Assembly (NCBI GenBank): GCA_965285935.1
Contig: OZ260664.1
Location: forward strand, 81,468,001-81,532,000
Direction of reading: 5' to 3'
From: Ophelia neglecta
Lineage: Eukaryota
Length of the DNA stretch: 64,000 nucleotides
Both the position numbers and the translations under genes were made by a program. This document shows, one piece after another, positions 8,984 to 35,800 of this stretch. The notes beneath the pieces are model-generated. The model saw only the letters and a program-made list of their open reading frames with translations, had not been told where the DNA came from and ran no database searches. The first letter of the stretch is position 1; every line of letters starts with the position of its first letter.

Positions 8984-11214
8984 CTATTTGTTATTACTAT
9001 CAAATTTGTTCCATCAGGTAGAAGTTATTCTAGTAAGTACAATTCGCCGACGCGACTCAGATGGGAAATTGCCGCGTTTCACTAATTCACTGCATGGGGC
9101 ATTCCCTCGGTTTGTTTATCCCAGACAATCCGTATACTATGTTTCTAAATCCAACAGAAACAATACTAGTACATCATTGGTAAAAATGCACTTCAGATAA
9201 GGAAAGAGGACATATGATGGTTAACATGTTTGAATAGTACACCCTTTTCCAAAGTGTTACGCATAAAATATTCAACCCTTTTCGGGAAAACGCTGATTTT
9301 TTTCATGTCAAAAAAATACATCTTTTTTCAAAAATCACTAACTTTCAAAAGTAAGGGAAATGCTTAATAATTCATTTGGCCTGGTAATTGGACAAGAGAG
9401 AAAGACGTAAATATTATGAAAACAACCATGGACACCTAATGCAGCCAATGCCTGTTGGAATCAGGCTGAAAACATGCCCCTTTTTAATTTCGCGAAGCCT
9501 GTTTGAAAAAAAACCCCCACCTTTTTCACTATATCACTAGATATGTTCCAGATGTGCAGGCCCCTGGGCCTATATTTAAAGCCTAGCACATTACGCCAAG
9601 CGACCGCCTCATATTTGACAAACTAGTCCTCATAAATAGGATGGTTAATAGCAGGTGTACATACACAATTATATGCTAATCTTAATTTTCCAGTAATTGA
9701 GACTTGGTAATGGAAATTTTAAAAGTGTCGGTGGATTTTTCTGTCAATGGATTCCGATCCCTATCTGTTATTTTAAATTAGTAATGTAGAGGTCTATGTC
9801 CTAGAAGCTGAAGTACATTTACCCTGTGTACATCATTGCTTTTCTGAAGCAGAAAAAGGTCCCGGTATTTAGTCGATAGCCTATTTGTTTAACTGGTTAA
9901 AATTTGTAACAGGGGAGATGACTTCACATGAACTTGAAGGTATCCCCGATCTCCGGTTTTTAGTTTCAAATACAGGTAAAAAATAATATATTCCAGTAAA
10001 ACTAAAGATTTGATGCTTTCATGATCTTCAAGGCGGTGTATGTATAGCGCGCTTTAAGTTCAGAATTACAGTACCTTTTAGGTCTAATATTTTCAACTAA
10101 CGTGTTAACATTGTCAAAATTAATTTGTTCCCAAGAAAAACACATTTAAAAGATACATAACATGTAGATCTATATGCTTATACATACAAAAATATAAAAC
10201 ATGATATTTAATAACTTCATTTTGTCCACGATCACCATTGTTCGCTTCTAAGTACGGTAAAGCCTCAAAACATCTGGTTTATAGTAAGCACGTGCATCAC
10301 TTTTGAGTATTTTTCCCTATGCTGTATTTTAAAATGTTTTCTCGCATTTTGAAATTTTGCTAAATATTTTAAATAACTCATTACCGCCTTCAAACCATAG
10401 ACGTTCAGTTGCCACTGAGTATGGACATGCAGTGTTTTAACCAATATAGCCCACACCATCTCTGATTATCCTAGGTATTCAAACTGTTGACAAGATAAAA
10501 TATTAGCAACAACAACAAAACGTCGGGCGCTGACATTACTTCATTAAAAGTCAAACTACCAGACACTAATATATTTTCTAAGCCAAATTATTTGGTGACA
10601 AGAATTGCAGTTCTTGAATATTTGTACTAACACATGTTAACATAAAATCATGCTGCTTTCATCTAACATATAATGCTCATACCATTATCGTATAGTGTAG
10701 TACCTCGACAAATCACTTTATATAATACAAATAAAATATTCTAATTGTCAGTTATGCTATAAGCCTATATCAGTTGCTCTAGTATCCTGTAAATGTATTA
10801 TAAACAAGCAAAGATTCACACAACATTCCGGTGTTTTGCAAAATCTCAAATCGGACAGGTAAGAAATTAGTTTAAGATTATGTTTTTAATTTCAATGGTC
10901 ACAATTTACAAACTACATTGTTCTTGCAGTAATACTTTGTTGATGGCATTTTGCAATTTTTTGAGCAATGAAAACAATAAACTTTGAAAATATGCAATAC
11001 TAATTTACCAATTTTATTCTTAAAGTCTTCTTTGCTAGTTTTATAAGGGCTAACTAATACTTAATGGTTATTCATTTCCTCTGACTTACAATGTTTATTT
11101 TGGAGTAAACGCTTCATTATTACATGTAAGATTTTTTGTAACATCTTGGAGTTCCTAAAGACCAAAACCTCACTCGTCTGTATTCATGCTCTTTAATGCC
11201 CTCTTCAGGGCAGC

Positions 11215-14200
11215 TTATTTTCCTGTTTTGTTTGATTTTTTCACTGGTTTCGGCTTGATTGCTGGCCTGCCTTGTATCGTTCCTTTTGGACATGTCCTTG
11301 CTGGATCCGGGCTTTCTGGCTCGGTATCTGATAAAACATTCCCAAATCTATCCACATTTAAGTACAAGTACTCTCCGGAAGCGCTCAATGTGCCACTCTG
11401 ACTCGTATTTTGATAGACATCATCACACCTGGTGTCTGTGGGCCCGGCTCCGCAATTATCACTCAAGTTTTCCCACTGCTGTGGACTTGGACCATTCACA
11501 TAATTTGCACCACTTGTATTCAGGCAGGGATTTGGATTCGGATCATCATCACACCTGGTGGCTGTAAGCTCGTCTCCGCAATTATCGCTCAAGTTGTCCC
11601 CCCCCTGTGGAAGTTGAACATTCAAATAATTTGCTTTTTTCCTGCGACTGATGGTATACTGCGGGCCATTGTGCACAGCTCGATCTGTATTGTATTCTGT
11701 TGTACAGGAATCTCTTAGCACGATGTGATTCAGTTGGTCTGCACTTGGAGGGTCAGTATTTTTGTTGTCAGTTGTGTTTTCATGTCCCTGTCTAATTAAA
11801 AAATTGAAAAAAGTTAGTAAAGCGTATAGGCCTCCGAAAAAAACAGAAACATTTAAATATTAATTCAAATAAGTTCTAACCAATGATATCAAATATTAAT
11901 TCAAATCTCTCAACACCTTGAACAATAGTAATACGAATGTATAAAGTGAAAAACAGGAAGCCTTTTTGCTGTATCAGATTGCACAATACTCAGTATTAGT
12001 AAACACCCAATATAGACTGGGGAACACGATTTTTATACTGTCACATCATAGGGGACTGGAGCAAAATGCATACCAGTATAATTTCAAAAAGTATACGATA
12101 TATAGCGAATTTCTTTCGTACTACATATTTAGAAGGTAAACACCCATTCATTTAATCGTGTTTTAGCCGCAATTGAGGTAGCAGACGGCGAGATAGGCCA
12201 TCGTCTTCATTTTTGGCCATTTAGAGGTAAAAAAGCGACCTTGGTGAAATGTCGACCAACATTTCTAATTCAGTCTCTATAGACCCTATACATGTTTAGT
12301 ATGCATATATCGATGCAGACTTTATTTCTTTATCAATGAGAAACGGCTTGTAACCATTTTACTGTCTGTAATGCTGGGCCCCTGGGAAGAACAGCAGCGC
12401 TGACAGGGTGTCCCAGGGTAAAGATTTTAAATAAATAAATAAAAACGCACCTGCAATAGTTTGTCCATCTGCTTAGATGTCCCCTACGCCATAATACTAG
12501 TAGTATGACTATGGCTATGACAATCAATGCAGTTACGCATCCAACAGCAATTTTCCATCCCTTAGAAGGAGTTGAAACTGAAAAGAGCATGATGCACTTG
12601 TCATTCAACCATTAATTATCATTCCATAACAGATGCCAATTGGTGAATGAGTTAAAATATCATCTTTTGCAAAAAACAGAGTCTTTGACCTTTTCCTCCA
12701 ATACTGAGTTCTCTTTAAAGCCAATAGAGATAAAAACGGAAGCGGTCGCGATTGTCCGAGTAAATAAAATGCCAAATTAGGATATTTGGAAATTAAGAAT
12801 AAAAAACACTGGGTATGTTCGTTTGCACGATAGAGTCGTTGCAAGTTTTTATTGCCACTGTTGGTCATCTGGCCCTTTTGGCGATGTGTCATTGGACGAA
12901 AGCCCCTGCTGTTCAATGATATGACGGTGTAGGTGACCAAAATCCCAATGATTTCTTCTAAGGTCTGTACGACTAAATTTACAACTCTTCCGAATGTTGA
13001 CAGTTTTGTTGGAAGATGGGTCCTTTGATTGTATATTATAAATCTCAGTATCCGACAGGGGCTTAGGGGATCCACAGGGTTTATGAAGAAATCATGTTTC
13101 ATTTAATGTACGATCTAATATTAGCAAGTGGTTGCTAACACACTAAAATGTTTGATAATTAGCATATACATATGGTGATATAATGATAAACACGCCAATT
13201 TTTATTATCTGGTAATGAACATGCAGAATCTAAAAACAACATATGGATACTAGTTTCATCATACAAACAGGTTCTGTGGTTTATATTGGGCCTATCCGTC
13301 ACGTTAGACTTTAGCAATTAACATGGCCTTTAATTGATTAAATACTTAATAATACGCATTCCTTGACATTGATTATGTCTCCAGAGATATCAGAAATAAC
13401 GAATTCCCAGATATCTTGTCTCGTTTGTAATCTTGTTACTCTGCCAACAGTAGAAGCCTTTCGTGGAACTACGAGAACTCCTCTCACAGTACAGTAGTCG
13501 CCGTAGGGGTTAGATGACCAACAGTGTTTACTTTTAAGAAAAAGAATCGCAGACGCCAAACTGCTTCTCAATATGTGGAGGCAGTGAAATGTATCTCACT
13601 ATAAAGGGTTAGATCTTTAACCTGAAAAATCCCAACTTACCATATGTAATTATTTACTCGCTGTTTCGTATGCACTTGCTCTAAGATTTGCAGACGGAAA
13701 TAGAGAGTATGTTTTAACGCAATTTGAAAATTGATATGCCTTATATATAATAGATAGTATAAGGTTGTTGATTCTCTCTTCTAAATTGTTTCTATGGTTT
13801 GCCTTGTAACGGAAGTTATACTCTCTTATGGTAGGTGTGCAGCTTGCCAGGGAAAATGGGGCAAGTCCCTCCTGTGCAAATGATTTCACTTTTTTTCGGA
13901 TTCACTAGACGACATGTAGAACCTTTTTGGCTGTGTTTCGGAGTAGTTTATTGAATGGATAGTAAGCAGTTACTATAAATATTCGATATTGTTAAAATAG
14001 GGTAAGGAACGGTTAAGTCATTTGAATTGTTAAAGATGACGATGAAGGTGTAATAGATAAACCTGTTGGGTATACACTCACCTGTTGTAGTGAATGTTTG
14101 AGATACATACTGAGTCAACAGACAGCCACCAGAGGTACATATAACAGATCGAACCCTGCAGTGGAATGTGTAATATTCAACTTTGAACGAACATTATGTA

Positions 14201-17200
14201 TTGGACGGTTTAATGCTTTTATACATCCAGGAGTAGTAAGTCACCTCATATGCTAGGAATAAAAGTACAGTGAAACCTGTGAATTAAGACCACCTAAGGG
14301 ACTGGAAAATACTGGTCTTATTATGGAGGTGGTCTATTTAGACAGGTTACTTTTACATGGAAAGTATGGTCTTAATTGCTAGGTGGTCTGTATGTAGAGG
14401 TGGTCTTTAAGGCAGGTTTTACTGTATAGCTTTAATTCCGCGATGCGGAAAAATGAACCTATTCAAGCCGACCCTATTTATGGTTTACCTGTACGTGCGT
14501 CCAGGGTGGACATAACCATTGCAGTATTGGGTGTCATTATACTCAGCACAGTCCCCGTCACTTCCTATAACAGTTGGAACATACTCGGGATAGGGAGGAC
14601 CTTCTGTAATAAAACATTTGATAGGGAATGGAGGGGACAAAATATTGTCATTGGTTTGCGATATTTACTTAGCATGAATAAAGCAAAATTGTTTTAATAA
14701 GGTGAGGTATGTCTGAAAATTATTCCCTAATTGTGACTAACCTGACGCGGACATTGGATTCCAATTATCTGATGTAGCTCTGTAGGCTGGTATTGGTTTG
14801 ATCGACTTCACACTAAACCAACCAGGATACTGATCATTTAACTCTGCCAGGCTTCCAATGGTTGTCATATTTTCAGAATCTACCAAATCTAAATTTAAGA
14901 ATAACTTATTGCTTTCTTTGAAATTAATATAGCGACATCAAGCGCACAATAACTGTACGTGTTTGAAACCTATTAACCAGGAAGCAGCCAGCAAAGTTAT
15001 AGTTTTAAGAAAAACAATAGGAACAGGTCAATACTCAGGTGTTTTTAATAGTCTGGGGACTGATGGTCTTTCGGTTATCAGCTTTTCTAACCAATTTGCA
15101 ACATTGAAGGGAATGTCTGATAATATTTGTATTGGACATTACACTCGTTTGCTGGTGTATTTATATCACTATATAGTTTTCTTTTCTGTCACCTTAATGT
15201 TATTATAAATATGTATTTTGCTGGTTCCTACGATAGCGATTATTTTCAAATCTTGGTAGGAGTCACACCTGTCCATGCATTGTACATACTTAAAAAACGT
15301 TATATTTTGCCTTATATCTGGCTTAATAAAAAACTTCTGAATCTGACCAAAAAAAGAATCTGTATGATGTATGTATTTGTATTTATGTATGTATATTTTT
15401 GTATGTAGTTTATTAAAGCAATCATGCGTATTGAATATAGTACAATGATCATATTAAAACCAATAACTTTAGGATAAACAACCAATACATAAAATGTGAT
15501 TAACAATGAATGACTAGAAGGTAATATGCACATTGAAATTGGTTAGATTGTTCAAGGTCATCATTGAACAGTATTTTCATTATGCTCTGCGAAACTATTT
15601 TAAATTAAACAGGCACCAGTTGTTAAGTTTATGCTCTATTAGTTAGTACAATGTGGAGGGAGCACATTGGTAACAGGCTTGATGCACTTACTTTCTTCGT
15701 CTATAACTATTAATGCAATCAGCAAGATATCTCCATTCCTATCATTAGTGATGAATTCTGATGATATTTCCAATGCAAATTGTTTATAACTGTCAATAAC
15801 TTCTGCGTCTGATTTCTTCACCGACAATTCTCCCTTTTCCTCACTTATAGAAGACGGGGCTATGGAAGAAATGCAATTGTCTCAGTATCTCTCTCTAAAC
15901 GATAAATTCTCAGACAAACTCATAATATGATTTATTTTTTATTACTAAAAACCCTGCTCCTAAACTATTATACTGTTATCAATAACCTAAAAGGAATTAC
16001 CGAGCGAAAACGTATCACTATTAAGACTACAGATGTGAAAGTGAAATGCGATCTTGAAAAAAAACTAGAAAATGAAGCTAAATTCTATTTTGATAACTTT
16101 AAAAGGAGAAGTTAAATTGGACATTGAATAGGTAATGGTGATAAACGAATCACCTACAACATATGCCAGATGATACGGTTTGGCTCAAAGATCCCATGCC
16201 AAACCCAGCTGAAGTTTTCGCAAAAACCTAAAAGGTTGTATTTCTACACTTCAAAACCAGTTTTTCTTAATTGCTATTATTAATGTTCGACGGTTATCAT
16301 TCGCACTAAATAGTCAGTTCAATACTCGAAGAAGAACAGTATGGATTTGAGATACATGTTCATAACTTATCGTTGAGAATTCCATCTGTTTTAAATTTGA
16401 CAATGATGTAAGAACACATATAAGGTTTTTCTCGATGTGTACTTGGTTACTTGGTTACCCCATTGCCACTGCAACTGCTACATAGTTATGATTCCCCAGG
16501 TCGTGCATGAACACTAGTGATAAAATACGTTCCAAATTTTACAAAATTCCACGTTTGATAAGACGAATAATTGACTATCTTGTAATATGCACCCACTTGA
16601 AAAACGTAAGTTAAATTATTGGGGTCAACGTTGATGGTTGCCGTGGTCGTCGACTCTCCAATGAACTCCTCTTCAATATTCAGGCTAGGTGACTTAAAAT
16701 GAAGAAGTCATAGGTAAAAACTTCATCAAAGGGTTTTACGTCCGAACTAAAGCAGATTACCTTATTGGGCTAAGTTAATGCATACTGGAGGCATATAAAC
16801 TTTCACCTTATTGGGCTAAGTTAATGCATACTGGAGGCATATAAACTTTCATCGTAAAAGCTAATTTAATTTAATTTATTCGCATTAGGTTTATTCTTTC
16901 TATTGTGCTTGATGTAGGGAAACTCCCATTGCTACAGAAAAGTGACTTGTTAACATCAAAACTCCAAAACGTTGTATTTACGCTTGTACTTCCTGTCACT
17001 TTGTACCCTTGAACTACGCCATGTTTGTCATAAATGCCAAGCTCCGACCAATAAAGGTGCACAAGGAAACATTGGTTTTGATTTGATAGACTATTGGCAT
17101 TGAAGTTTTGTACTGCATTTGGAACTGAAATGACAAAGCAAAATCACATGGCTGTATGAAGTTGTACTGGCTTAATGGGAAATAAATTAAGAACAAAAAG

Positions 17201-20200
17201 GAAAGTCAAGTATACACAATTATATACCATCTTCCTTAGTAGTACATCCGGCAGTATTTGTTCCAGGCGTCACATATTCCCAGTTGTTATTTTCAGGGTC
17301 AGTGGTTGAGGCAGATACGGAGACATGATATTCCCAATAAGGCCGAAGACCTCCGTATGATGTTTCGGTGCTGCTAAAACCTGGAGAAGGATGACACAAC
17401 GGCACTAATTGAGGTACATAGCATCACCATTCGGCTTGTTACCCAGACGGTCGAGCTTTAAAACTATTTGTTCGATGCATTCTTAGTGCTATTGAAGTAA
17501 AAATAAGTAGCTGAAGAAAAAAAGCAAAAATACCATCAACTACTTTAGTTTGAAGAAACATCCTATGATAAACATCGTATATTGCGATTTGATACTGAAC
17601 GTGTGGTCCGGTGGGCACTGCTCCCTCCTCGAGTGTCCAACTTGTATGTAAATCCGTAGGGCTTGTGGCGTTGGCGGTTATGTTTTGTGGGGCATATGGG
17701 TCTGAAAGAAATAATTTCACCTTAAAGTGGGGGTTTGACTTATTACTTTGGGAAAAAAAGGATCACAATAAAACTATTGAAGCAATAAATTGAGGTATGG
17801 GAAAAAAACATAATATAATCACAATATCATATTTTAACTGAGAAACAAATCGTAGCTCAGGATTTGATCTTTTGAACTCATCTGAAATAAGTTGATTGGC
17901 CTTCTTGAACTGAAGTAAATTGAAGGAATTTGAATTTGATAATTGGAGATCAAAGGGCCAGTAAAATGTGGAATAATAGCAAAATGGAAAAAAACCTACA
18001 CCCAACGAGTGTTGAAGCATTGAACTTGCAGATTGGCCCCTGACCAATACTGGTCCAAGCACTGATCTCAAACATATACGTTGATGACGGAGCAAGGTTC
18101 TCAACATGTAAAGTTGTTTCGTTGGTTGTCACTGAGCCATCTGTATCTGGATATACCGGACTTTTCCAGCTAACGGAATATTTGGTTATGATCCCATTGG
18201 TTGGTTCTGGTGGCTCCCATACCAGAGATATATTCCGGAAGCCTCTGTTCGCGATTTCTTCACATTGCATCAAGCCAGGGACTGCAAAAATCAAAGCATG
18301 GTCATAATTCGCAGAACATATTTTCTGAACTTCGATATAAACGATACTAATTGAATTTACGTGACCATCAATGATAACCAGTCTCCCTCATTAATCTCTT
18401 AACATATGATCAGATTTGCATTTTTGTCAACTAAAGATTAGGATCCATGTTAATACTAAATGCATAACTGAATAAATGCCGAATTGGGAAAAAAATGCCT
18501 GTATAGTATAGCCATTTTTTTTCTTATTTCCGTTTGAAAGGTTTTTAACAATACAAAACCAGCTTTTGACTTTTCGAGCGAGCTTTCTGAAAAGGTGCGC
18601 CTACCTTTACATAAAGAAGAATGAATAAAATATACCCCATTGTTTAGTTGTAACCATTTCCGATTGCTTCCCTTGCCCTTCGCCTCCTGGGTTAGTAGCT
18701 GACACAGATGCAGTGTATGTGGTATACGGCTGCAGCCCGGTCACATTTAAATCCAGCTTTGTTGCTGGAACCGTCTCATTAGAAATGTCATTGCCTAAAG
18801 ATGATCGTGTCCTAACCGTGTAATTGACTATATTTAAACTGTTGTCTGGTGGTATCCAGTTGATCAGAAATGACCAAGGTTCAACGTATAAGTCTCGGAT
18901 GTCAACAGATTTGACCTGACCAGGCACTATAAATTGATATAAATATTTCTTTATTACTCTTATTATAAAACATTGGGCAACTACCGAGCAACTATCATGC
19001 CTTATGTGTTCAGGAAGAAATAAATTGCACGTACATGTCCAACTTCTGTCCGTATTTGATTTGCTATTCTCTTCTAAGTTGTCATAGTATCTAGCCGATG
19101 CTGCAATGCTACAAAAGTATTCTGCATTTTCTTCTAATGCTCCTATTTCCATGTAGGTTGTGTAGCATGAGACTGGGTCATTTACAATAGTTGGACCATT
19201 AAGCAGATGCTGATGTGTTATTTGTAAGTCAGTACATTGTGCAACACTGGGATCCATTATCAAATTGTTGTCTATTAATAAAGCTATGGCTGAGATATTC
19301 AGCGGCTGGGCAATAAAGCTCACTGGTGGCAGAGGCTCTATATAAGGAAAATACAATATTAGTGCTATAATAAATGTCTCATCCCGTGTTTGATATTGAT
19401 CATCATGTTAGTTCGGGTCAAAAGTAAAGTTAACAAAACACACATTCAATCATTTCATATCAATAATGGGCGTTAAGAGACAGTGTTGACACGTTAAGAT
19501 CGACTGTATGAAGCTGACTGTATGACTGCTGAAACAAACTATACCAACTGGTGACGGATGCCACAGGTTTTGCTGCCGCCATATCGTCGTCCAGTGTAGT
19601 GGTTACCGTGACGTTGTACAAAGCTCCAGCGGTAAGGTTTACACACGAACCTGTGGTAGCATCTCTGCCGACCACAAGCCGCTGGGGACTGACTGCCCCA
19701 AAGTGACCTAGGCAGTCAATAACAAACCCACCATTGACCCCATTCGGCAGAGTCCACGACACATTAATGGACGTTTCTGTGGTAATTGTTGATACTGATG
19801 TAGGTGGATCTACCTCTGCGTTGGAAACAAAAGCAAAGAAAAATGATCAATCTTAAATTATGATAGGTTTACCTTTTCGTACTTAATAAATGTATGTTTT
19901 ATATAGAACTAGCAGCAACCATACGAATGGAGAATGCAAGCGATTTTTATGATATGGGTTGATATGACATAGGCAAGTTTCCTTGAAATGTTGCTAATTC
20001 TAATGTTTCAATGTGTCATTTTTGTCAACATTTATTATAGATCACCATTACTGGTATTTCTTCAATTCACACCGGGTTTTTAAGGTTGTGACCTGACGAG
20101 TTTCAATATGAAGATATATTGCCAAATTATGGCAACGTGTCGGGATTCTGATTACGGGACATACGGAATAAGGAATTAGAAAAAAACTTCATGTACCAAC

Positions 20201-23200
20201 TCGATTGGTTTGCTGCCGGGGAATAGGGAGCCCCACGGCCTATTTCCAAAACCACTTTCTGGTGGAATTGTGTCCAAAGCACCAATTATGAAGGATTATA
20301 TTTTTCTTTTAGATTAGATTGAAGTTCTATATATCGCGTAACAATGAGAAAATTAATGCATGGTGACCCTAGATACAGTGTTAACATATCATACTTAACC
20401 AGTTTGTCATGCGAGCAATAATTAATGGTTGATAGAAATTTAAAAAGGGCTCACTTGTTGTACAGTTAACGGTGGTAGAAGTAGAACTGACTAGTCCCAA
20501 ACTTGATGAAAACACATCCAAGCTGTATAAAGAACCGGGTAACAGGTCGTGTAGTTCAGTATTCTGGGTATCATTATTCCTATTCGTGTCATTCAATGTA
20601 AGCATTGCCCCTGGGTCTCTATCATCCGTATAAACCACAATGAATGTGTCCATGAGATTAAAATCCTCAGGAACAACAGTGATGGTCAAGGTAGTAGTAC
20701 TGGAGTTCAAACACGAGACGGATAATGGTGGCTTGGGTTCTGTTAAATTGGGTTGAAATATTAGATAATTATTCATATAGTACTAAATACGATGTATGAT
20801 ACTTGATAAACAGAGCAAAATCATCAATTTAGAATATTATATATAATCAGTCTGAAAGTATCAAGAACCAGCAGGCACAGGAACACTAATCCCCAGATAC
20901 CCAACAGTGATACATCGCTTGCGATAAGTTTCTACAGTTTTTTACGATGCAAGTCAGAGCACAAGACAAATGAGCAAGTGTTCAACGAAAGGAGAAATGA
21001 AATATCACATACGAGATTCCATTGCGGATAAATAACTGCGAAACTAATTTGGGCTCAATAAAGACAAAAACAGAAAAGGATGTCGAGGGTCCCTGCAAAA
21101 GTAGCACTATATTCAACGATAACTATAAGATCTGCGTAGTTACAGGCTTATAGCTTCAACCAATGGCAGTTCTATTTTCATGCAGCATAACTTAACCTAC
21201 TTTACCTACTAAAAAAGAATATTTGGCATGATTCTATCTCAGACAAAGGTCCTTGTTGATAATGCGTTAACCAAGAGGGTACGTCTCCTAAACCACTTTT
21301 ACCATTAATTAAGAATAAAACAAGTAACAGTATAATATATTAAAATTACAAACGAGAATGGAAACCCGTCAGAAAAAATCAAATTCTTGATAAAGAATTG
21401 TTCAACCAATCGGTCCGAAACAGAAATAAAATAGCTCTCGGGAGTCTACGAATGACAAAGCTTTCTCACAAATGTGACACTGTCCGATAAAATTGCTTCT
21501 AAAAACACAAGACCAGAGAAGGATACGAAACGCCCGTGTATACTAAAGAGGAAAAGGGTATAAGAACTCCTCGATGGTACAATACATGTTTTCTGTGTAA
21601 ATTTTGGCAATCAAAGTTTAATTGTGAGTGCCCATGTGCATCTGCAATATACGATGTTTCATATCAGTATGAACCAGATGCTCCAAGAATGAATGTAACA
21701 GATCACTATAAGGCACGGCAGTCTTATACTGCATAAAGTAAAAGAGTTGAATTTAATCGTTTTAAATTATCACTATGTAGGAAAGCTTTGTTTTAAAATC
21801 GATAAATTATGACCAAATGAGTGATTTAAACGTATCCATTACCTGTTTGTTGTAGGGTACTTTGCGCCTCACTTTCCAATCCTCCACTTAATGCCACGAG
21901 GGAAACATTATACCATTTGCCGCTTATGGGCAAATCCCACAAGTGAGCGGTATCAATGCCATTAGTTCCAAAGCTAATATTGACATTCGGCCATTTTTCA
22001 TCTGATACTAGAACACTGAATTCGTCAACAAGTCCTGGCTGGTTCCAAACAAGAAATAAATGGTTCGAGCCTCTCTCCATCAGGGCGATGTCTTCTGGTT
22101 TTGATGGCCCTAAATGATGAATAATGTTAATATGTCGGTTTTATCATAAATCATAAACTTCTATTAAAGATATGAATGTGAAATGTCTATAATTAACTGC
22201 TTTATTCGGAGCAATAACTTTTATTTAAACCGTATGTATATTTCAGTTCAGCCATATATAGTGACAGTCTGTAGGGCCTCTAATGAATTTTTCAATCCTT
22301 TATTCTTTTTAATTTTCAATAGGATATGTACCGAAGGTTTCAACCCCAGTATATGACTAGCTGAAATGCTGATGGTAAATCATGGGATAATATATAGTAA
22401 TAAGTATTGGCACGCCTATTCACAATTTAACAATATGTATGCTAGTCGTAATGGCAGACAGCATTAATGTTTCTGGGCATAGTTCATTTATCAATAAAAC
22501 TTCCTTGTCATATGAAAAATACGCTGTCAAAACAAACAAAACTTATCTCGAAAGTAATTATTTGATGTCACATATATCCGTTTTATCAGAGGATTTTACT
22601 CTTACTAAATGACTATACGCCTGCGGGAAGTATTTGATGTTATTGACAGAATCGTAATTAAATCAACCGTAGACCGAACCATATTATGCGAATATGGGCC
22701 AGGACACTGGAACTCGCCACCATATATGCCTGTGGTTTAGACCCGCGTTATAGCGTCCACATTAAGCTGTTGGAAAGTCACCAAGAATTAATGCTTGGAA
22801 GTCATATTCATGGTAGACGTCTGCAGTTATATCTTTTAAATCAAACAGGTTCCTATTGAAGACCCAGATTTTCCCCAGGATACAATATTCGTCGTTTTTA
22901 CTATCTGACTGAATGACAATTGTTCAACATTTCAAATCTTATGTCACCATCTTAATAGTAACACGAACTATAGCGCTTTTCGGTATCTGCGAAGTTCTGA
23001 ACCCCACAAAACATGTTTAAGTGCTCAGTTGAATGACACAAATAAGAGACAATATAATATGAAATATTATTGACTGAACTTAATGAAGTATTTTTTGATA
23101 AGTTCATGCACTGTGTATTAATCAGAGATGACTTTTTGAAGATTTTAAACTTAAACAAGATATCATGACAATAATAAATCGCAAATTTTGTTTTAACTGG

Positions 23201-25736
23201 GAGAATATATGTTCACGGTAAACTTATCAGATTCCAACTTTTATTCAAAAAACGAAAAGATATATACAAGGTGATATTTTAGAAGATCATAACAACCTCT
23301 CATGAAGACTCCTTAAGGTTTAAAATAATCGCTCGCGAGAGCCACCGTGTCTTACTACCGACTTGTCCTCAGGATCCTTATATAAAATAAATCCGTTGCC
23401 AGGGAGAACAAAATGAGATAAATATATATTGGCACGTAAGGCATGATGATTAGTTAAAAGCTTCTGAAATACCTCGCAAAAGTTACCTTTATTAATAAAA
23501 TCAGGAAACTATTATTTTTTATAAGCTCTTAATGTAATTACATGAAGGTTTTGTCGCCTAAAAACACTTAACAATATGGTTTCGGAACATAAAATGTATA
23601 AATTTGATTGATTTACCATTGGGTCCCTACATATGGTCAAATGTTTTGATCTCATTAGTGCTCAGAAACATGATTGCCGGTTAATTAATTCATGGTTTCA
23701 TTTAAGTGATAACTGGGCCAGTTATTATTGGAAAATACAACTTAGTTTGTATTGCAGTACATACTATAGACCAAATCTTAGATACAAATCTTACTTGTGA
23801 ATGCATCATAAAATGTTTCAGGTTTTCCTAATAAATTGTTGCTGCTAGCAGTCACAGTTAGTTCATATCCTTTTCCTGGCACGGACAGTTTTGTTATCAT
23901 AGCACAGCAGCAATCCTCAATCATCTCTGTGACATAATCCAGTTCTCCCAAAACATTTATTTGAAAATCATCATTTGAACCCTCTTGATTCCAGCAGATG
24001 GCCATGCTGGATGTTGTTTGTTCCATAACAGTAATGTTGTTCGGCTTTGCCGGGTGGGTACTATTGCTTTCAGAAACAGGTTCACTGCTGCCATTTGGTC
24101 CATTTGATACTAGAATGACAACATAAATCTCTCCTGGGATCAGGTCAGTTATTAGGTAAGAAGAGTCATATCCACCAAGTATCTCGATGTTTTCCTTAGT
24201 TGTGTTCCAACGTATGGTGTGGCTATCGATGACTTCGGCAGAAGATGATGTCCATTCAAGTAGTAGAGAATCAGTAGATGCACTGGCTGGATATAATCTT
24301 TCGATGGATGGCGGTACTGGTGAATCTAGATAAAGAACAAGATATGCTTCTTTCGAAATATAAAGGTATTTTAAATTTATTATAAACCGGTAAAAATGGA
24401 TATTGTTTGGAAAGCAATAATCCTTCTGTGCGGGTTTATTTCAATCTGCTAGGGATATCCGAGACCGGGGAAAATATAAACATGCAGTGAAACTAACTCA
24501 TCAACCTATAAATGATCAAAATAATATGTTTACCATTAAACATTATGTACCACTTGTAAACCATTGTGGCACTTTTTTATTATCACAGTATCACTATCAT
24601 ACGAAACTCTTTATTTTGTCGATTTTTTTACACAGTGTCAGGGGAAAAGGTCTGGTCTGTATTTGGCGTTGTGTGCGGTACGATAATTACTTGGCGCTGC
24701 TGCTCTGGCGAGTATTGGGTTTGCAGTCAGACTAAGATTATGAGTTCTCTTATCATTGTTCTCTCGCAGCGCAGCGCCAAAAGCGCAGCGCCGACTACAG
24801 GAAGCCAAAATTTGTCAGGTTAAGAACGTCGAAATATTATATATGTATTGGGGAAATCAACAGTTACTGTACATAACTGGTTGTATGTGAAAACGCAATG
24901 TGCTCGAGCGATTTGAGGCCGCAGATGACCACCCCCTTAGCTTTTTGCGTGAAAGATAAGAACTGCTGGAGGGATAAAATCTGTATGTAAAAAGTAACGT
25001 TAAAAATCAACGTTGGTACGGAGTACGGAAACATTTCATTTACATAAACCAGAGACCTACATAAATATATTGAATATATGAACGCCTCGTCGCAGTAACT
25101 TCTCGTCGCAGTAACTTCTCGTCGCAGTACTAAATTGCTTCCTCGGTCTTTGAGTGTTGTGCCACACCTGTGATGTCTCCACTTGCCGAAGGTCGTTTGG
25201 GCGCCTGGTGCTATCGCTAATTCGGTTGCATCAACTTTTAATTTGACTGACGTGATGGGCAAACACAATTATCCATAATTGCGGAAAGATGATAAAGATG
25301 ATTTAATATATCTAGAAATGTGGTCATTTAAATTACGTTACATATTCTATGTTTTACCTCTGTTTGAAATAAAATATGTTTAAAAATTAGATAAATGCAC
25401 CAAGAATCACGTTTTGGCGAAAACATTTCGTATGATATAAAAAAAAGAAGGAGCACTGTATAAAATAGAAATATGTAAAGCATTGTTGAAATTTAAAGTT
25501 GCGATTAATCAATGACAAGATAGAAAAATGAAGACGCAATTCTCATAGAAACTCTAGCATATTGGGAAAACAATTATCGGCACTGACAATTCACTAATTT
25601 TCTATGGCAATACTTTCCAAAACGCATTTCGTTGTAAAAAAAATAACTTACCCTGTGAAGGAACCATGTCAATTGCAAGGAAAATGAAAGAAGAAAACAA
25701 ATAAACATTTAAAATCGACATATTTGAAATCGCCAT
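11215..25736 (-). CDS. Fibronectin type III repeat type I transmembrane protein with R3 receptor-PTP-like ectodomain (PTPRB/PTPRJ/PTPRQ/Ptp10D-like) but no phosphatase domain; ~1382 aa, 19 exons
   Basis: Exons (high-low): 25736-25652 (signal peptide MAISNMSILNVYLFSSFIFLAIDMVPSQ), 24325-23795, 22109-21843, 20739-20455, 19815-19549, 19337-19035, 18926-18636, 18281-18000, 17701-17534, 17380-17228, 17124-16982, 16692-16597, 16227-16158 (10 FN3 domains, e.g. GLQPYTTYTASVSATNPGGEG), 15859-15692, 14888-14742, 14603-14489, 14155-14082 (juxtamembrane NGDILLIALIV..W..AYRA..IGSDGDC..YCNG..PGRTYRVR), 12577-12451 (TM IAVGCVTALIVIAIVILLVLW-RR), 11791-11215 (tail, TAA). All GT-AG with compatible phases; total 4149 nt and open. 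Minus-strand AATAAA at 11094-11099. Confidence 0.85.
14268..14424. mobile_element. Tc1/mariner/pogo-type MITE (157 bp) in intron
   Basis: TA|CAGTGAAACCTG...AAGACCACCT ... AGGTGGTCTT...CAGGTTTTACTG|TA: imperfect ~28-bp TIRs, TA target duplication and internal GGTGGTCT repeats. Confidence 0.8.
16759..16851. repeat. Perfect 46-bp tandem duplication in intron
   Basis: ACCTTATTGGGCTAAGTTAATGCATACTGGAGGCATATAAACTTTC occurs twice in tandem. Confidence 0.9.
25088..25129. repeat. 16-bp tandem repeat (~2.6 copies)
   Basis: CGTCGCAGTAACTTCT repeated within a CpG-rich part of intron 1 of the FN3 gene. Confidence 0.7.
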
Positions 25737-27106
25737 AATATCCACAGTGTTTCTCTGTTAATCTCACAAAGATGAACTGCCTTGAACATAGTCTAGTGTT
25801 ATCACTAGACTCGATAGCGAAGTAGGTACTTTTTCGCCAGCATAAAAGTATGCACCTTAGCTGAAATGATACATCTCATCATTAAACTAAGTGGACTTTA
25901 TACTCAATACTCTATTACAATGTGGTTGGTCTTAAGATAGGGTCCTATGACAAAGCTACAAAGCTTAATTTCATAGGTAGGACAATGAATATCAACAAGC
26001 TTACTTCCTTGTCTGATATTATGAAACACATACACATGTCAGCCGGGCTCAATTTGCTATGAAATTCCTGAAAGGATCAAAATCTTCACTCCAAGTATTA
26101 CCAAAGAATGAGCGCGTTACACATATACGTTTTACCCTTCGAACGATATTGACATCTGTCCAAGTTTGGGAAATCATTTTTTTGCCACCACTTTCCTTTC
26201 CAAAATTCCAGGTGTCTATGAGGAACACCCCCTTAACTTTATATAATATTGTAAAAAGTAAAGCTACATAATAACATATTAAAATATAACAAAAGTGCAG
26301 GTAACTCCAGCAGGTCACAGTGTGAATTGGTCTCACGATTCAAAACACGTGTGCAAGGAAACAAAGCTGGCTATTAAGTAGCTAACAAACAGGCAAGACA
26401 CATTTGACAGGGACAGTACCAAATTCATCATAAATTTATAGTAATAAGATAGTTGTTCATGTCACCAAAAAGATTATAAATTTTTTGACGCGACCCCAGA
26501 CTCCAGGGGAGATGTTAATGTCCAGTTGAGCAGATAGCCACAACTTTGATATTCACCTGAACCTTCACAAATTTCCTTGAGTAAATATCAGTTCCTTCTC
26601 ATTACTGAAAGGGGAATTTTCCCGACTGAACCAAGTGAAAAAAGGCGTGGATACCCGGCAGACACAGCCAAATCAGTAGTAAAGAAGAGTCAAATAAATT
26701 GGTCCGAAATCATCAACACCTGAGTCTCTATCAACACGTTTTTCTCGGGCAACAACCTGACCACATATCATCATTATACCACTCATCTAACTCATGCGTG
26801 CGTCCATAACTTGCCCTTCCCTTCCCATACCCAGGCATCGTCGTAGGTTCGAGGCACCACTCCCCTTCTCCGCCCTCCGACTCGCGCCCTCTGGCACCTG
26901 TTGTGTGCCCCCCCCCCCCCCCGCGCCTCCTGATACTCCCCGTGTGTTCATCTCTCGCCTGATACCCTATTTTTTCATTAATTAATTTATTCTTCGTCGC
27001 AACCCATTGAATCCCAAAAACAAAATTACATAAGCATGAGATGTTAAACAACATACTGCGAAATCGTAGGCCGTTGGACGCCAAGCAATTTCTTCAATTT
27101 CTTCCT

Positions 27107-27484
27107 GGGCAATCTCAACTGCCGATGGATCGTGGGCAATATCAACTGCCGAGGGTTCATGGGCAATATCAACTGCCGAGGGATCATGGGCAATATCAAC
27201 TGCCGAGGGATCATGGGTAATATCAACTGCCGAGGGATCATGGGTAATATCAACTGCCGAGGGATCATGGGTAATATCAACTGCCGAGGGATCATGGGCA
27301 ATATCAACTGCCGAGGGATCATGGGTAATATCAACTGCCGAGGGATCATGGGTAATATCAACTGCCGAGGGATCATGGGTAATATCAACTGCCGAGGGAT
27401 CATGGGTAATATCAACTGCCGAGGGATCATGGGCAATATCAACTGCCGAGGGATCATGGGTAATATCAACTGCCGAGGGATCAT
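27107..27484. repeat. 27-bp minisatellite, ~14 copies
   Basis: Unit GGGYAATATCAACTGCCGAGGGATCAT; copies are near-identical with a single C/T variant position. Confidence 0.95.
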
Positions 27485-27615
27485 ACAATGGACAGTCGCC
27501 TCAGCGCTTATCTTATGATTACTTTCTAAATTCATAAAGATCTGTTACAACACCTAGAGGCTCTGATTCAAAACAATTAATTACCTTGTTCTTTCCTAGG
27601 CATTCGATATACATA

Positions 27616-31837: not shown

Positions 31838-32830
31838 CATCTTCCTCGGCAATGACTACGTCAGTATTTGTCGGTCGGTGGTTGAGGCTGAAACTGTGAC
31901 GTTGTATTCAAAACTGGGATGTAGACCATCATACGAAGTGTCAGTCTGGTTGAAATCTTGTGAAGGATGAACGCATACGAATTCAATACAAATGACTCCA
32001 GGTGCCTTTAAAAACATTTTCGGGTAGTTAAAACCTCTTCTTTTTTTTACTAAGCTGTGCTAAAAACGGTTAGTTTCATAAAATTTATTGCCATTGTTCT
32101 AGTGTGTTAATAATAAAGTTAACCGATTCTTATAAGGAAGCGTTAAATTTTACATATTACCTTACATATCAATTTCTTGTGGCGGCAGATATGTCCGATA
32201 ATAAATATCGTATATGTAGGCCTATATGATATCTTAATTTGCGGTCTTCTGGGCACCGCTCCCTCCTCCAATGTCCAGCTGACAAGTATATCCATAGGAC
32301 TGGTGGTGTTAGGAGCGATGTTTTGCGGGGCAAATGGAACTAAATAAAAATAGCAATGAATTATATCAGTTTGCTGTCTGACAACAAAGCAAATGAACGA
32401 CTACTTAAGTTATGTTATGATTTTATAAGCTTGAAATAAAGTAATAGACCCATTGAAGAGTAAATTAGTGATGAACTTCGCAAAAGTTACTTTCATGCGA
32501 ATTGATGGTCACATTAATAGCCAGATACAGGTGTACATAGTAGATACATAGTAGGAATTTTTAGTTGGTACTTGAGCAATGCTTTTGTTGTTTAAATGGG
32601 ACGGTGCAATCACAGTAAAAATGAACTTCATCCAACAGTTGTTGAAGCATTGACCTTTTAGACTGGTCCCAGACCTACACTAGTCCAAGCGCTCATAGCA
32701 AACATGCAAAAAGAAGACGGTGCAGGGTTCTTCACATGCAAAGTGGTTTCGAGCCACCCGCCCCTTTACATACCAGGGAAGTCCATTCAACAAAATAACT
32801 TGTTATGATACCATTAGTTTTTAGTTTTGG
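31838..32830 (-). pseudogene. Frameshifted partial duplicate of exons 8-10 of the FN3 receptor gene
   Basis: Three collinear segments, ~32630-32830 (ETTLHVKNPAPSS..SAWTSVGLGPV), ~32165-32339 (PFAPQNIAPNTTSPMDILVSWTLEEGAVP) and 31838-31956 (FNQTDTSYDGLHPSFEYNVTVSASTTD..EDG), match 18000-18200, 17534-17701 and 17228-17380. Introns are retained; frameshifts and deletions are present. Confidence 0.85.
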
Positions 32831-35800
32831 CGCTCAAATCAGCTGTTAAAAAGTTGTCAAAAATTATATTACATCGTCGCAAACTATTGAATTGCCGAAA
32901 TTATTGTAAAGGGGCTTAGAAAATGTGACAAAATCTTAATTAATTATTATCGTTATTTATTATTGCAAATATTCAAATTAAAGAAAGGGGGTGAAATGAA
33001 TTCGAATTTGACGACGTGGCATTTATGTTACTGAAATGGAAGGTAATTAAGTCATTTTTGCGTCGTCCAAACTGCTACAACGCAAGAAAATTATAAACTA
33101 TTGAAATTCTTGAAAACATTAAAATATACTTTCTTCCGAAAGGCATGGAAGTACCGAAGTGACACGCCGTGTAAGCGTGTCAGAAAGAAAGCTGAAATAA
33201 AGACTCTAGCTCTACATTGTCGCGGGTAGATGTTCCCATTTAAAATTCTCTACCTGAATTCCCGATAATTTAACACAGTATTTAATGAGCCAAAAAAAAG
33301 TAACAAGAGACCATTTAGATAGATTCTTAGATAGTCTCAAAAACGTCCATGTGAAACTTGGTTTGTTTACATGTAATGAGTTGATATCATACAGGACACA
33401 TACCCCTGGCTTTATAGTAGTCAATACATACAGTCCTACATAGCCACACACACACTACTATGCATGGCCCAATTGATAAGTAGCATACTCTTCAAATCAA
33501 ATTAAAAATCTTAAAGTAGTGTCATTAATAGGGTTCACAAATTGCTCCGACCTTTATCAGTGAAAAAAATAGGGGGACATAGATTGACTTCCGTAAATGT
33601 TGCGCCCAATCGGTATCAGGGTTGGAAAATTGTTTTTAGAAAAGAGATGACACCTTGCTACGTATACTCCTTCCATTTGCCGAACTTGGGAATAAACCTA
33701 GTAAAGCATGGTAGCAAAAACATTGAGGCTATAAAAAAATTGAGGCAGAGTAAGCGTTCCATTCTTCCCGTGACTGATGAACTTTTGTTGTAATTTTCAT
33801 TATATATAGTTGCAATAGCAACACAGAACAAAAATGGTGACTCTTCATGACTTTTGTAATATCTTTATTTGAGCATGCTGGCCTTCTACATGTATTGGGA
33901 GCAAATAGAAATGGATACATTGCGATTCTGATAGTATAATCATGTTTGGCCTGGACCTATTTAGTTGTTGCTATATGTAGCTATATGAGAGTTATTGTTT
34001 TGTTTCATGTTGTGTTTTCCTATTGGTTTGGAGAGAACCTGATGTCCTCATACACGAGTGTCCCATTATTAAAACAAGGCTAGTGTCGATTTCCAAAGAC
34101 ACTAATGTAATGAATGTAAATATGATAACAATTATAAATGTAGTGTATAGAAACACGAGTATTGTTGTGAATTTATAACGATAATAAGATGGAAAGAGTG
34201 TTAGTTTAGAATGTTGTGTAGAATGCAAAGTGTGTGTGAGTTTTAAATAACAGTGGCAAATAAGTTGAGTGTGTATGAATGGCTAAATATGCATTAATTT
34301 AAGTATTTGTTTTTATTTTACTTTCAGGTGTTTGATTTAGGGTACAGGTAATTTGTATGATTGGATTTGTGAGTGGGGATGTATATTTATGAATTAATAC
34401 GCAAGTATGAACTCACCCTTTCTTGGAACCTGATCATTATACGCCAAGATTACATTTATCTCTGAGAGCCCCCCCCCCCCCCCCCCTTCCCAGCCCATTG
34501 GATCAATTTAATATGGCCGAGCAGCCACTATACGAAAAGCACCTCAGTCAATTGTTGATAATGTTAGCCCCCACCCCAACCCCCACCCCATCCCCTCCAT
34601 AATTGCCTATTTTATATATAATTGAACATCATATCATAATCTACGCTATTTCTTCAAAAAAAACAACAATTTTAATGCAGTGTATGCTTAGTGTGAATGT
34701 CATTTATAACATCGCGGTTTGCCGCGATTGGAGGCTGTATTAAAATCGACAAACTGGTATCTCCGTGTGCCGCCAGGGGTCAGCATTGCTATCTCATGCC
34801 TCAATATACACAGTTCTTAACGCGGCTGAGACACTAACCTTCACTATTTAAACATGTTAATCTCTTCAGCGAAAGGAAAGGTGTTGCTGGGCAAAACAGT
34901 CGACGCCAAGATTGCTCGGTTAATTATTTTACTGCTGCGAACGGGTCAAAACAATTTGCAGTTGAACAGGCATCAGTTTCCAGAAGCACGTAGAATTCTT
35001 GAGAACTTTTGAAATACGAAGAGTTTAAAAAAATGCACCAAGTATCGTATTTCTTAAAACCTTCAAAAGTTCACATTTTTCTTTCAACAATTCGGCAAAT
35101 ATTGTTCCCAGTGAATTGTCAGTGAGTTGTTTTGCGCGAGTTAAGCACTTAACTGGATATGACCATTGCATTTTTACTAGATATATGGGCCTATAAGCCT
35201 ATATCTATGGAGGTAACCTTCCAGAGCTTGTTTCTTATACTGCCTCATATCGCTCCTCTGGTATTGACATTATATATACATACGGCCTTTTCGTAAAGAT
35301 TACAGATATGGTTGAGGTGCCATTTTGATCCACATTTAGATCCATATTTCCTTACACATTTTGACCGTTCGTCGGTCAGGCTTTGTCAAGAGTTTGATCT
35401 ACTAGCAGCAGTTTTGATCCTAATTTCTTCTTGGGAACGATGTGATGACTCAGACCCTGCATGGAAATTGTTCAATATAGCCCATTGTTCCTTATAGCCC
35501 ACACTATTGAGTATATTATATAGCCTCAGTATATGTCGTATTAAAAAGTGGGTGGCGGTGGCGGTGATGGTTTGAGGGAGGGTGGGGGAGGGAGGTTAAG
35601 GTTTTCACAGTTGCACGATGAATGACATCACCATTTCACAGTTCATCATTATTATTATTGTGCCTTGCCCTCACAGGCCACGACCCCCACCCCACCCCAG
35701 CCCCTCCTCACACACACTAACCCACCCCTATCCCCAGCACTAAATAGTTAAGTGGAACAGCTCATGTTATGGTTTTATTGCCTTTTTGATATGATTAACC

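What the first reader, a model, noticed from the sequence alone, without database searches (positions are those of the whole stretch)
11215..25736. Receptor-PTP ectodomain with the phosphatase replaced by a LAT-like tyrosine adaptor tail
Seen: an intact 19-exon ORF with signal peptide, 10 FN3 domains, a juxtamembrane module, one TM helix and a ~200-aa polar tail ending in TAA followed by a polyA signal; I found no KNRY, WPD or HCSAG exon downstream. Established: an FN3-only ectodomain with the NG.I..IV / W..Y / IG..C..CNG.L.PG..YR module characterises R3 receptor phosphatases (PTPRB/J/O/Q, Ptp10D), which normally carry a catalytic domain. Inference: this is a non-catalytic derivative whose output is inverted, acting as a kinase substrate or scaffold instead of a phosphatase. 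It could be a lineage-specific signalling, immune or recognition receptor.
Basis: partly seen in the sequence, partly recalled or inferred. Interest (0 to 1): 0.8.

Follow-up and report, generated by a model that had tools for sequence, protein, structure and literature searches.

The report
Phosphatase-less R3 receptor with YxN tail
An invertebrate gene keeps the whole outer part and membrane anchor of an R3-type receptor tyrosine phosphatase, but ends in a unique tyrosine-motif tail instead of the enzyme, so it probably acts as a docking site for kinase signalling; no RNA data were available to show that it is expressed.

Summary
On the minus strand, 25736 to 11215, there is a stop-free 19-exon model (all GT-AG, 1,382 codons). 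It encodes a signal peptide, about 10 FN3 domains, a four-exon juxtamembrane module, one TM helix and a 191-aa polar tail ending in TAA, with AATAAA 118 nt further on.

The R3 origin is well supported. The closest paralog (G000:C7:46.02-46.055 Mb) is a catalytic R3 phosphatase gene. It matches this gene exon by exon for exons 2-17, and by eye through the TM exon, with the same intron phases. It then continues into PTP exons with intact KNRY, WPD and HC-SAGVGRTG motifs. This gene instead splices to a terminal exon with no relative in the genome.

An exon-level PTP profile found nothing in the window or 40 kb downstream, although it found every PTP exon in control loci.

The tail has 7 Tyr, 4 of them in YxN (Grb2-type SH2 motif), and an in-frame 126-nt duplication.

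No RNA runs exist, so expression and the terminal splice are unproven. The docking mechanism is an inference.

Verdict: a real non-catalytic R3 derivative, a new variant of a known kind.

The parts
25652..25736 (-). Exon 1: ATG at 25736, hydrophobic signal peptide; donor AGG|GTAAGT, phase 1
23795..24325 (-). Exon 2: FN3-1 and FN3-2 in one exon (phase 1-1)
   Evidence: Pfam fn3 4.6e-11, with weak Fn3_Dep-1_3rd/4th hits. About 40% identical to eight tandem two-FN3 exons of paralog R3e.
21843..22109 (-). Exon 3: FN3-3
20455..20739 (-). Exon 4: FN3-4
19549..19815 (-). Exon 5: FN3-5
19035..19337 (-). Exon 6: FN3-6. Divergent and not seen by Pfam.
   Evidence: (25% identity to R3e, E 0.025)
18636..18926 (-). 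Exon 7: FN3-7
   Evidence: Pfam fn3 1.1e-11; 44% identity to R3e
18000..18281 (-). Exon 8: FN3-8
   Evidence: Pfam fn3 1.4e-11
17228..17701 (-). Exons 9 (17701-17534) and 10 (17380-17228): FN3-9, split by a phase-1 intron
16158..17124 (-). Exons 11 (17124-16982), 12 (16692-16597) and 13 (16227-16158): FN3-10, split by two phase-0 introns. Boundaries were fixed by homology to R3e.
14082..15859 (-). Exons 14-17 (15859-15692, 14888-14742, 14603-14489, 14155-14082): the large R3-type juxtamembrane module. Intron phases 1:1:1:2:1.
   Evidence: The custom R3 juxtamembrane profile matches collinearly at positions 5-21, 33-59 and 69-92; 0 of 2,000 shuffles reach the summed score. Matches to R3e exons at 26-44% identity, with the same phases.
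12451..12577 (-). Exon 18: TM helix plus basic stop-transfer. The donor is phase 2. This is the last exon shared with the catalytic paralog.
11215..11791 (-). Exon 19: 191-aa polar tail plus TAA. It has 7 Tyr, four in YxN (YLNV, YVNG, YQNT, YLNV), a basic and proline-rich C-terminus, and no relative elsewhere in the genome.
11418..11634 (-). In-frame tandem duplication inside the tail, with a period of 126 nt = 42 codons. Identity is 83.5% over 91 nt and 20 of 42 aa. It doubles one YxN motif.
11094..11099 (-). AATAAA polyadenylation signal, 118 nt after the stop

Best explanation
This is an intact single-copy gene for a type I membrane protein of about 1,382 aa. It arose by duplication of an R3-type receptor tyrosine phosphatase gene; the catalytic sister gene is still present 35 Mb away on the same contig. 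The signal peptide, FN3 stalk, large juxtamembrane module and TM exon were kept. All exons downstream of the TM exon, including the phosphatase, were lost, and the TM exon now splices in phase 2 to a new terminal exon (these steps are shown). That exon encodes a probably disordered tail with four YxN motifs. The inferred mechanism is that ligand binding or clustering of the ectodomain brings the tail to Src-family or receptor tyrosine kinases. The phosphorylated YxN sites then recruit Grb2/Drk-type SH2 adaptors, possibly at several sites at once. The receptor would then act as a phosphotyrosine docking platform instead of removing phosphate. R3 phosphatases themselves carry a YxN docking site after their catalytic domain, so this output is an amplified version of something the family already does.
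For: Gene integrity: the 19-exon GT-AG chain has no stops; an open tail frame by chance has P about 6e-6; FN3 hallmark residues are kept. R3 ancestry: of the 150 best database hits to exon 2, 46 carry a PTP catalytic motif and 54 carry the R3 juxtamembrane module, and many are named PTPRB. The juxtamembrane exons match an R3 profile collinearly, with 0 of 2,000 shuffles reaching the sum. The gene is collinear exon by exon with the catalytic paralog R3e and shares its intron phases. The phase code 1:1...:2:1:2 fits the published R3 code (PMC5336234). Phosphatase loss. R3e keeps KNRY, WPD and HC-SAGVGRTG. Tail: no genomic relative; 4 of 7 Tyr are in YxN, reached by 298 of 100,000 composition-preserving shuffles; the 126-nt duplication is in frame; the only exonic indel among allelic contigs is 6 nt and in frame, whereas 7 of the 8 intronic indels are not multiples of 3. 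Published background: YxN after the PTP domain is conserved in R3 RPTPs including an annelid one (PMC5336234), and phosphorylation there recruits Src-family kinases or Grb2 (PMC4259406, citing Murata 2010). Multiple phosphorylated Grb2-SH2 sites are how LAT, LAB and LAX work (PMC3291652).
Against: There is no RNA evidence at all: the only public runs holding this DNA are DNA contigs from one sample. No ortholog was found, as the best database identity was about 31%, so conservation of the tail and its motifs cannot be tested. Allelic variants in exons run 6 nonsynonymous to 3 synonymous, which does not show constraint. Two of the four YxN motifs come from one duplication and so are not independent. 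YLNV also fits the YxxΦ endocytic signal. Pfam PTP_tm does not score single exons. The two other R3 genes examined in this genome have no YxN after their PTP domain.
Confidence: 0.55

Rival explanations
1. The gene is real and lacks a phosphatase, but the tail does not signal through SH2 docking. The protein would be an adhesion, scavenger or ligand-trapping receptor, and its YLNV-type motifs would be YxxΦ sorting or endocytosis signals. Alternatively it is simply a decoy for ligands of R3 phosphatases.
For: Both YLNV motifs fit YxxΦ. The ectodomain is long and rich in N-glycosylation sites, like adhesion molecules. There is no evidence for phosphorylation.
Against: YVNG and YQNT fit YxN but not YxxΦ, and Asn is enriched at +2. 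The ectodomain is only 25-47% identical to its catalytic sister, so shared ligands, and hence a decoy role, are not obvious. R3 family tails already use YxN (PMC5336234).
Confidence: 0.2
2. The tail exon is one alternative terminal exon. A catalytic isoform would also exist, using phosphatase exons more than 51 kb downstream.
For: There are no RNA data to exclude it. RPTP genes often have truncated isoforms.
Against: No PTP exon was found in the window or 40 kb beyond it, using a profile that found every exon in controls. In the other R3 genes examined here the PTP exons begin about 2-5 kb after the TM exon. The nearest listed PF00102 matches on this contig are about 2 Mb away, although 99 weaker matches were not listed.
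Confidence: 0.08
3. It is a silent or decaying truncated duplicate (unprocessed pseudogene) whose frame happens to be still open.
For: No expression data exist. Allelic variants are 6 nonsynonymous to 3 synonymous. Broken relic copies of exons 8-10 lie just upstream. Another R3 copy in the genome (C7:77.29 Mb) also lacks PTP exons within the roughly 26 kb searched after its TM exon.
Against: Divergence from the nearest paralog is old (25-47% amino-acid identity). Even so, all 1,382 codons and 36 splice sites are intact, where the chance of that many open codons at intron stop density is about 2e-38. FN3 core residues are kept. The tail indel and the tail duplication are both in frame.
Confidence: 0.07

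Closest known systems
R3-subtype receptor tyrosine phosphatases (PTPRB/VE-PTP, PTPRJ/DEP-1, PTPRO, PTPRH, PTPRQ; Ptp10D/Ptp4E), and in this genome the catalytic paralog at G000:C7:46.018-46.055 Mb
   Same: An FN3-only ectodomain with one FN3 per phase-1-flanked exon. A large juxtamembrane module with the NG.I..I.V, W..Y and IG..C..CNG...YR motifs and a phase-2 intron after YR. A single TM. YxN docking tyrosines in the cytoplasmic part. Exon-by-exon collinearity with the paralog (PMC5336234).
   Different: There is no phosphatase domain. The cytoplasmic part is a single unique exon with four YxN motifs, instead of about 340 aa of PTP domain plus a short tail.
LAT / NTAL (LAB) / LAX transmembrane adaptor proteins
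   Same: A probably disordered cytoplasmic tail with several YxN (Grb2/Gads SH2) motifs and no enzymatic domain (PMC3291652, PMC2196071).
   Different: LAT-type adaptors have almost no ectodomain and a juxtamembrane CxxC palmitoylation motif. This protein has about 1,150 extracellular residues and no CxxC. No Pfam family, LAT included, matches the tail. The likeness is analogy, not homology.
Unstudied database proteins with an R3 juxtamembrane module but no PTP domain, for example the tick 'PTPRQ-like' proteins XP_077549602.1 and XP_049275420.1
   Same: FN3 array, R3 juxtamembrane module, TM, and a cytoplasmic tail of 87-100 aa without a phosphatase.
   Different: Their tails are unrelated and lack YxN. 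One is flagged LOW QUALITY, so they may be truncated models. They are not close relatives of this gene, with about 30% identity in the FN3 domains.
Lectin/EGF/FN3 receptor families of this same genome that pair phosphatase tails with tyrosine-motif tails
   Same: The same theme: an RPTP-type ectodomain joined either to a phosphatase or to a tyrosine-motif tail.
   Different: They are a different ectodomain family, arranged in tandem and nearly identical to each other, with ITAM-type motifs. Here the two genes are 35 Mb apart and anciently diverged, and the motif is YxN. Those notes were not checked here.

Membership tests
R3-subtype receptor protein tyrosine phosphatase | Ectodomain made only of FN3 repeats | tested here: met
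   Pfam fn3 in 7 exon pieces and no other domain type. The best database hits are multi-FN3 R3 RPTPs.
R3-subtype receptor protein tyrosine phosphatase | Large juxtamembrane FN3-like module (Pfam PTP_tm, PF18861) | tested here: met
   The Pfam model gave no hit on single exons, and the joined protein was not scanned, by instruction. A profile built here from 54 R3 proteins matches exons 14, 15 and 16 collinearly; the summed score is 17.0 bits against a null of -8.2 +/- 5.4, and 0 of 2,000 shuffles reach it. The paralog R3e matches all four module exons.
R3-subtype receptor protein tyrosine phosphatase | Family gene structure: FN3 exons flanked by phase-1 introns, and juxtamembrane/TM code 1:1:2:1:2 | tested here: met
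   The phases here are ten phase-1 introns, then 0, 0, then 1:1:1:2:1:2. That is the published code (PMC5336234) with one extra phase-1 intron. The last three phases match those read in R3e; R3e's TM-exon phase 2 rests on an inferred GC donor.
R3-subtype receptor protein tyrosine phosphatase | Single cytoplasmic PTP catalytic domain (KNRY, WPD, HCxxGxxR) | tested here: not met
   No PTP exon in the window or 40 kb downstream, by tblastn and by an exon-level profile, while controls were all found. No listed PF00102 hit lies near the window.
R3-subtype receptor protein tyrosine phosphatase | YxN phosphorylation motif in the C-terminal cytoplasmic region | tested here: met
   There are four YxN motifs in the tail. 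They sit in a non-homologous exon, so this is a functional likeness only.
LAT/NTAL/LAX transmembrane adaptors | Multiple cytoplasmic YxN (Grb2-SH2) motifs and no enzymatic domain | tested here: met
LAT/NTAL/LAX transmembrane adaptors | Very short ectodomain and a juxtamembrane CxxC palmitoylation motif | tested here: not met
   The ectodomain spans exons 1-17. Only one Cys follows the TM helix, 13 residues after it.
LAT/NTAL/LAX transmembrane adaptors | Sequence homology to the family | tested here: not met
   Pfam scan of the tail at E up to 1 returned no family. The Atlas feature search gave no usable hit.

The most novel reading that the evidence does not exclude
This gene and its catalytic sister R3e form an ancient activating/inhibitory pair within the R3 family. 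One dephosphorylates kinase pathways. The other, on engagement, becomes a multivalent pYxN platform that recruits Grb2/Drk and switches Ras-MAPK-type signalling on. This would be the first case of an R3 phosphatase ectodomain rewired to the opposite signalling polarity, with tail valence tuned by in-frame duplication.
Probability: 0.2. Interest if true: 0.75.

Novelty: new variant of a known kind. Interest (0 to 1): 0.55.

Why it matters
R3 receptor phosphatases (VE-PTP, DEP-1, Ptp10D) are studied as brakes on receptor tyrosine kinases. A sister gene that keeps the whole extracellular sensing part but swaps the enzyme for a multi-YxN docking tail would show how animals can reverse the sign of a receptor by exchanging one terminal exon. 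The exact breakpoint, the phase-2 intron after the TM exon, is visible here. It also adds an R3 example to a pattern that this scan has noted in other receptor families of the same genome. Finally, it gives a clean natural experiment, one paralog with and one without the phosphatase, for asking what R3 ectodomains sense.

Tried and rejected
- **RNA evidence.** The look-up of sequencing runs returned only three runs from one sample, none on record as RNA. Laying them down showed genomic contigs that cover the introns, with no splice joints. Expression is therefore untested.
- **Pfam PTP_tm.** There was no hit on single exons, and PF18861 across the whole genome gave no hit in the window.
- **Large protein search with exon 2.** It found no ortholog and no self-hit. 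The best hits were about 31% identical multi-FN3 proteins. These were useful only for building profiles and for showing that R3 RPTPs dominate the hits.
- **Other R3 genes of this genome (C7:77.37, 77.29, 31.93 Mb; C12:24.85 Mb).** Only one weak hit was found, to exon 16. Their juxtamembrane A|B intron is phase 0, not phase 1, so no shared intron is claimed there.
- **Tail as the last R3 exon exposed by deletion.** Rejected. The last intron of R3a is phase 0, whereas the TM exon ends in phase 2. There is also no sequence similarity, and R3a and R3c have no YxN after their PTP domain.
- **Relatives of the tail.** None in the genome and no usable Atlas hit. The search for homologous proteins was not used for the tail, because its length window would hide full-length relatives.
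- **AlphaFold on the tail alone.** Mean pLDDT was 32.9. That is compatible with disorder, but a single-sequence model proves nothing.
- **Constraint from allelic variants.** 6 nonsynonymous to 3 synonymous is too few to interpret.
- **SH3-type motif in the C-terminal RPAIKPKPVKK stretch.** It fits no canonical class by inspection, so nothing is claimed.
- **Complex prediction.** Not used, because phosphotyrosine-dependent binding cannot be modelled that way.
- Joining the exons into one protein for Pfam, folding, or a juxtamembrane phylogeny.


Full report
**Observation**

The window is G000:C7:81468001-81532000 of a 762-Mb invertebrate genome. Earlier scan notes call the organism annelid- or mollusc-like; I did not test that.

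Stop-to-stop frames on the minus strand between 25757 and 11218 show a row of FN3-like pieces, a hydrophobic piece and a 214-codon terminal piece. Pfam finds fn3 in seven pieces (eight domains), with weak hits to the Dep-1 (PTPRJ) FN3 families, and finds nothing for the juxtamembrane, TM or tail pieces taken singly.

I fixed the exon boundaries from splice signals and phases. Where those were ambiguous, I used homology to a paralog.

- Every intron is GT-AG, and no exon or split codon holds a stop.
- It totals 4,146 nt, or 1,382 codons.
- It runs from ATG at 25736 to TAA at 11217-11215.
- AATAAA lies at 11099-11094.

Stops occur at 0.061 per codon in this gene's introns. A 191-codon open tail after a phase-compatible acceptor therefore has a chance probability of about 6e-6.

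Everything below was done exon by exon, by reference. The whole-protein Pfam scan, a fold of the juxtamembrane domain and a tree of that module are therefore missing.

**No phosphatase**
- PF00102 has more than 249 exon matches in the genome. None of the 150 listed lies near the window.
- tblastn with a full PTP protein from this genome finds nothing in the window or in the 40 kb beyond it.
- I built a profile from 46 PTP domains of R3 proteins and ran it without filters on all open frames of 15 aa or more. It finds every PTP exon in four control loci (E from 1e-23 to 0.03). It finds nothing on the right strand in the window or the 40 kb downstream.
- That covers 51 kb past the stop. In the R3 genes examined here, the PTP exons begin about 2-5 kb after the TM exon.

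**Where it comes from**

A phmmer search of 1.84 billion representatives with exon 2 gave 447 hits, none above about 36% identity, so there is no ortholog or self entry in the library. Of the best 150 hits, 46 have a PTP catalytic motif about 270 residues after a TM helix. Sampled hits are fn3 + PTP_tm + Y_phosphatase proteins, and many are named PTPRB.

Starting from three PTP_tm segments, I built a profile of the juxtamembrane module, which 54 of the 150 hits contain. Run against all 2,036 open frames of the window, exon 16 ranks first and exon 14 third.

The three exons align to consecutive parts of the profile: positions 5-21, 33-59 and 69-92. Their summed score is 17.0 bits, against -8.2 +/- 5.4 for shuffled exons, and none of 2,000 shuffles reaches it.

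The decisive evidence is a paralog. Searching the genome with exon 2 and exon 8 finds only one other locus, C7:46.018-46.055 Mb, on the plus strand. tblastn of every exon piece against that 70-kb locus gives matches in the same order for exons 2 to 17, at 25-47% identity. The missing exon 13 was then found by comparing the two genes.

The two genes share these features:
- FN3-9 is split into two exons, and FN3-10 is split by two phase-0 introns in both.
- A phase-2 intron lies directly after CNGY...YR.
- The following exon is exactly 74 nt in both.
- A phase-1 intron precedes the TM exon.
- The TM exon opens with a similar PKGW/SKGW motif and ends in phase 2. In the paralog this last point rests on an inferred GC donor.

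The phase code agrees with the one published for R3 genes: FN3 exons 1:1, and the large juxtamembrane domain 1:1:2:1:2 (PMC5336234).

After the TM exon the paralog goes on to PTP exons with KNRY, WPD and HC-SAGVGRTG intact. The window's gene goes to its tail exon instead. The tail has no match in the paralog or anywhere else in the genome. The swap point is therefore the intron after the TM exon.

The low identity to the sister gene, together with a fully intact frame and retained FN3 core residues, argues that the phosphatase-less copy has been kept by selection for a long time. This is an inference. I could not compute dN/dS because no ortholog is available.

**The tail**

The tail is 191 aa and rich in N, T, D, P, G and S. 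It has 7 Tyr, four of them in YxN: YLNV, YVNG, YQNT and YLNV. Composition-preserving shuffles reach four YxN in 298 of 100,000 trials.

A 126-nt (42-codon) tandem duplication, 83.5% identical over 91 nt, lies in frame and supplies one of the motifs. This agrees with an earlier first-reader note on the same exon.

Among allelic DNA contigs, the one exonic indel is a 6-nt in-frame deletion near the C-terminus, while 7 of the 8 intronic indels are not multiples of three. Exonic substitutions are 6 nonsynonymous to 3 synonymous, and none touches a YxN motif. This is too little to show constraint.

AlphaFold on the tail alone gives pLDDT 32.9, which is compatible with disorder.

**Mechanism**

Shown:
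- R3 ancestry.
- Loss of the phosphatase.
- A new coding terminal exon that carries YxN motifs.

Inferred:
- The tail is phosphorylated on these tyrosines and recruits Grb2/Drk-type SH2 adaptors, as the multi-YxN tails of LAT, LAB and LAX do (PMC3291652, PMC2196071).
- R3 phosphatases themselves do the same at the YxN site after their catalytic domain (PMC5336234; PMC4259406, citing Murata 2010).

The main rival reading is that the YLNV motifs are YxxΦ sorting signals on an adhesion or decoy receptor. An alternative catalytic isoform and a silent pseudogene are each unlikely, but they cannot be excluded without RNA.

**Comparison and novelty**

The gene cannot be filed as an R3 RPTP, because the defining catalytic domain was tested for and is absent. 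It is an R3-derived non-catalytic paralog.

It works like a LAT-type adaptor only by motif. It has no homology to that family, no short ectodomain and no CxxC.

Database proteins with the R3 module but no phosphatase do exist. Several are plainly truncated models. Two tick 'PTPRQ-like' entries may be complete, but their tails are unrelated. I found no paper describing such a protein.

Earlier notes of this scan report a similar swap of phosphatase for tyrosine tail in lectin-type receptor families of the same genome. I did not check them.

I rate this a new variant of a known kind. It is solid as a gene-structure finding, but its expression and signalling are untested.

Noticed in passing
window 31868-32842 (minus strand): Broken relic copies of exons 8, 9 and 10 of the gene lie 6-7 kb upstream of exon 1, in the same orientation. 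They are 48-70% identical at the amino-acid level and 72-75% at the DNA level, with a stop and a frame shift. They look like the remnant of a partial tandem duplication.
   Followed up: partly
G000:C7:77286974-77290110 (loci L004, L011, L016, L017): A second R3-type copy, a tandem neighbour of the catalytic R3 gene at C7:77.37 Mb, has juxtamembrane and TM exons nearly identical to that neighbour. No PTP exon was found in the roughly 26 kb searched after its TM exon. It may be another phosphatase-less or truncated R3 copy.
   Followed up: partly
G000:C7:46018349-46028173 (loci L021, L022): The catalytic paralog R3e carries eight tandem copies of the two-FN3 exon that occurs once in the window's gene. 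It also has duplicated KNRY-type and WPD-type exons, which could be mutually exclusive exons or pseudo-exons.
   Followed up: partly
window 26982-27535, 44056-48669, 61649-62743: Three long minisatellite arrays, open in several frames, with peptide-like periods such as DPSAVDITH, GSLVVIDLHGYSH and HHGISLA. The 42-48 kb stretch has raised GC and a strong AT skew. No gene-like content was seen.
   Followed up: no
window 14260-14430 and 12300-12500: Contig depth in the DNA runs jumps to 1e3-3e5 here. These are high-copy repeats inside the introns between exons 16 and 17 and after the TM exon.
   Followed up: no
window 2172-3038 (plus strand): A tandem array of a unit of about 150 nt that gives overlapping ORFs with a repeated 'SPWALVVPFGVTELWPTF' peptide. 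It is probably a satellite or a degraded repeat family downstream of the gene.
   Followed up: no
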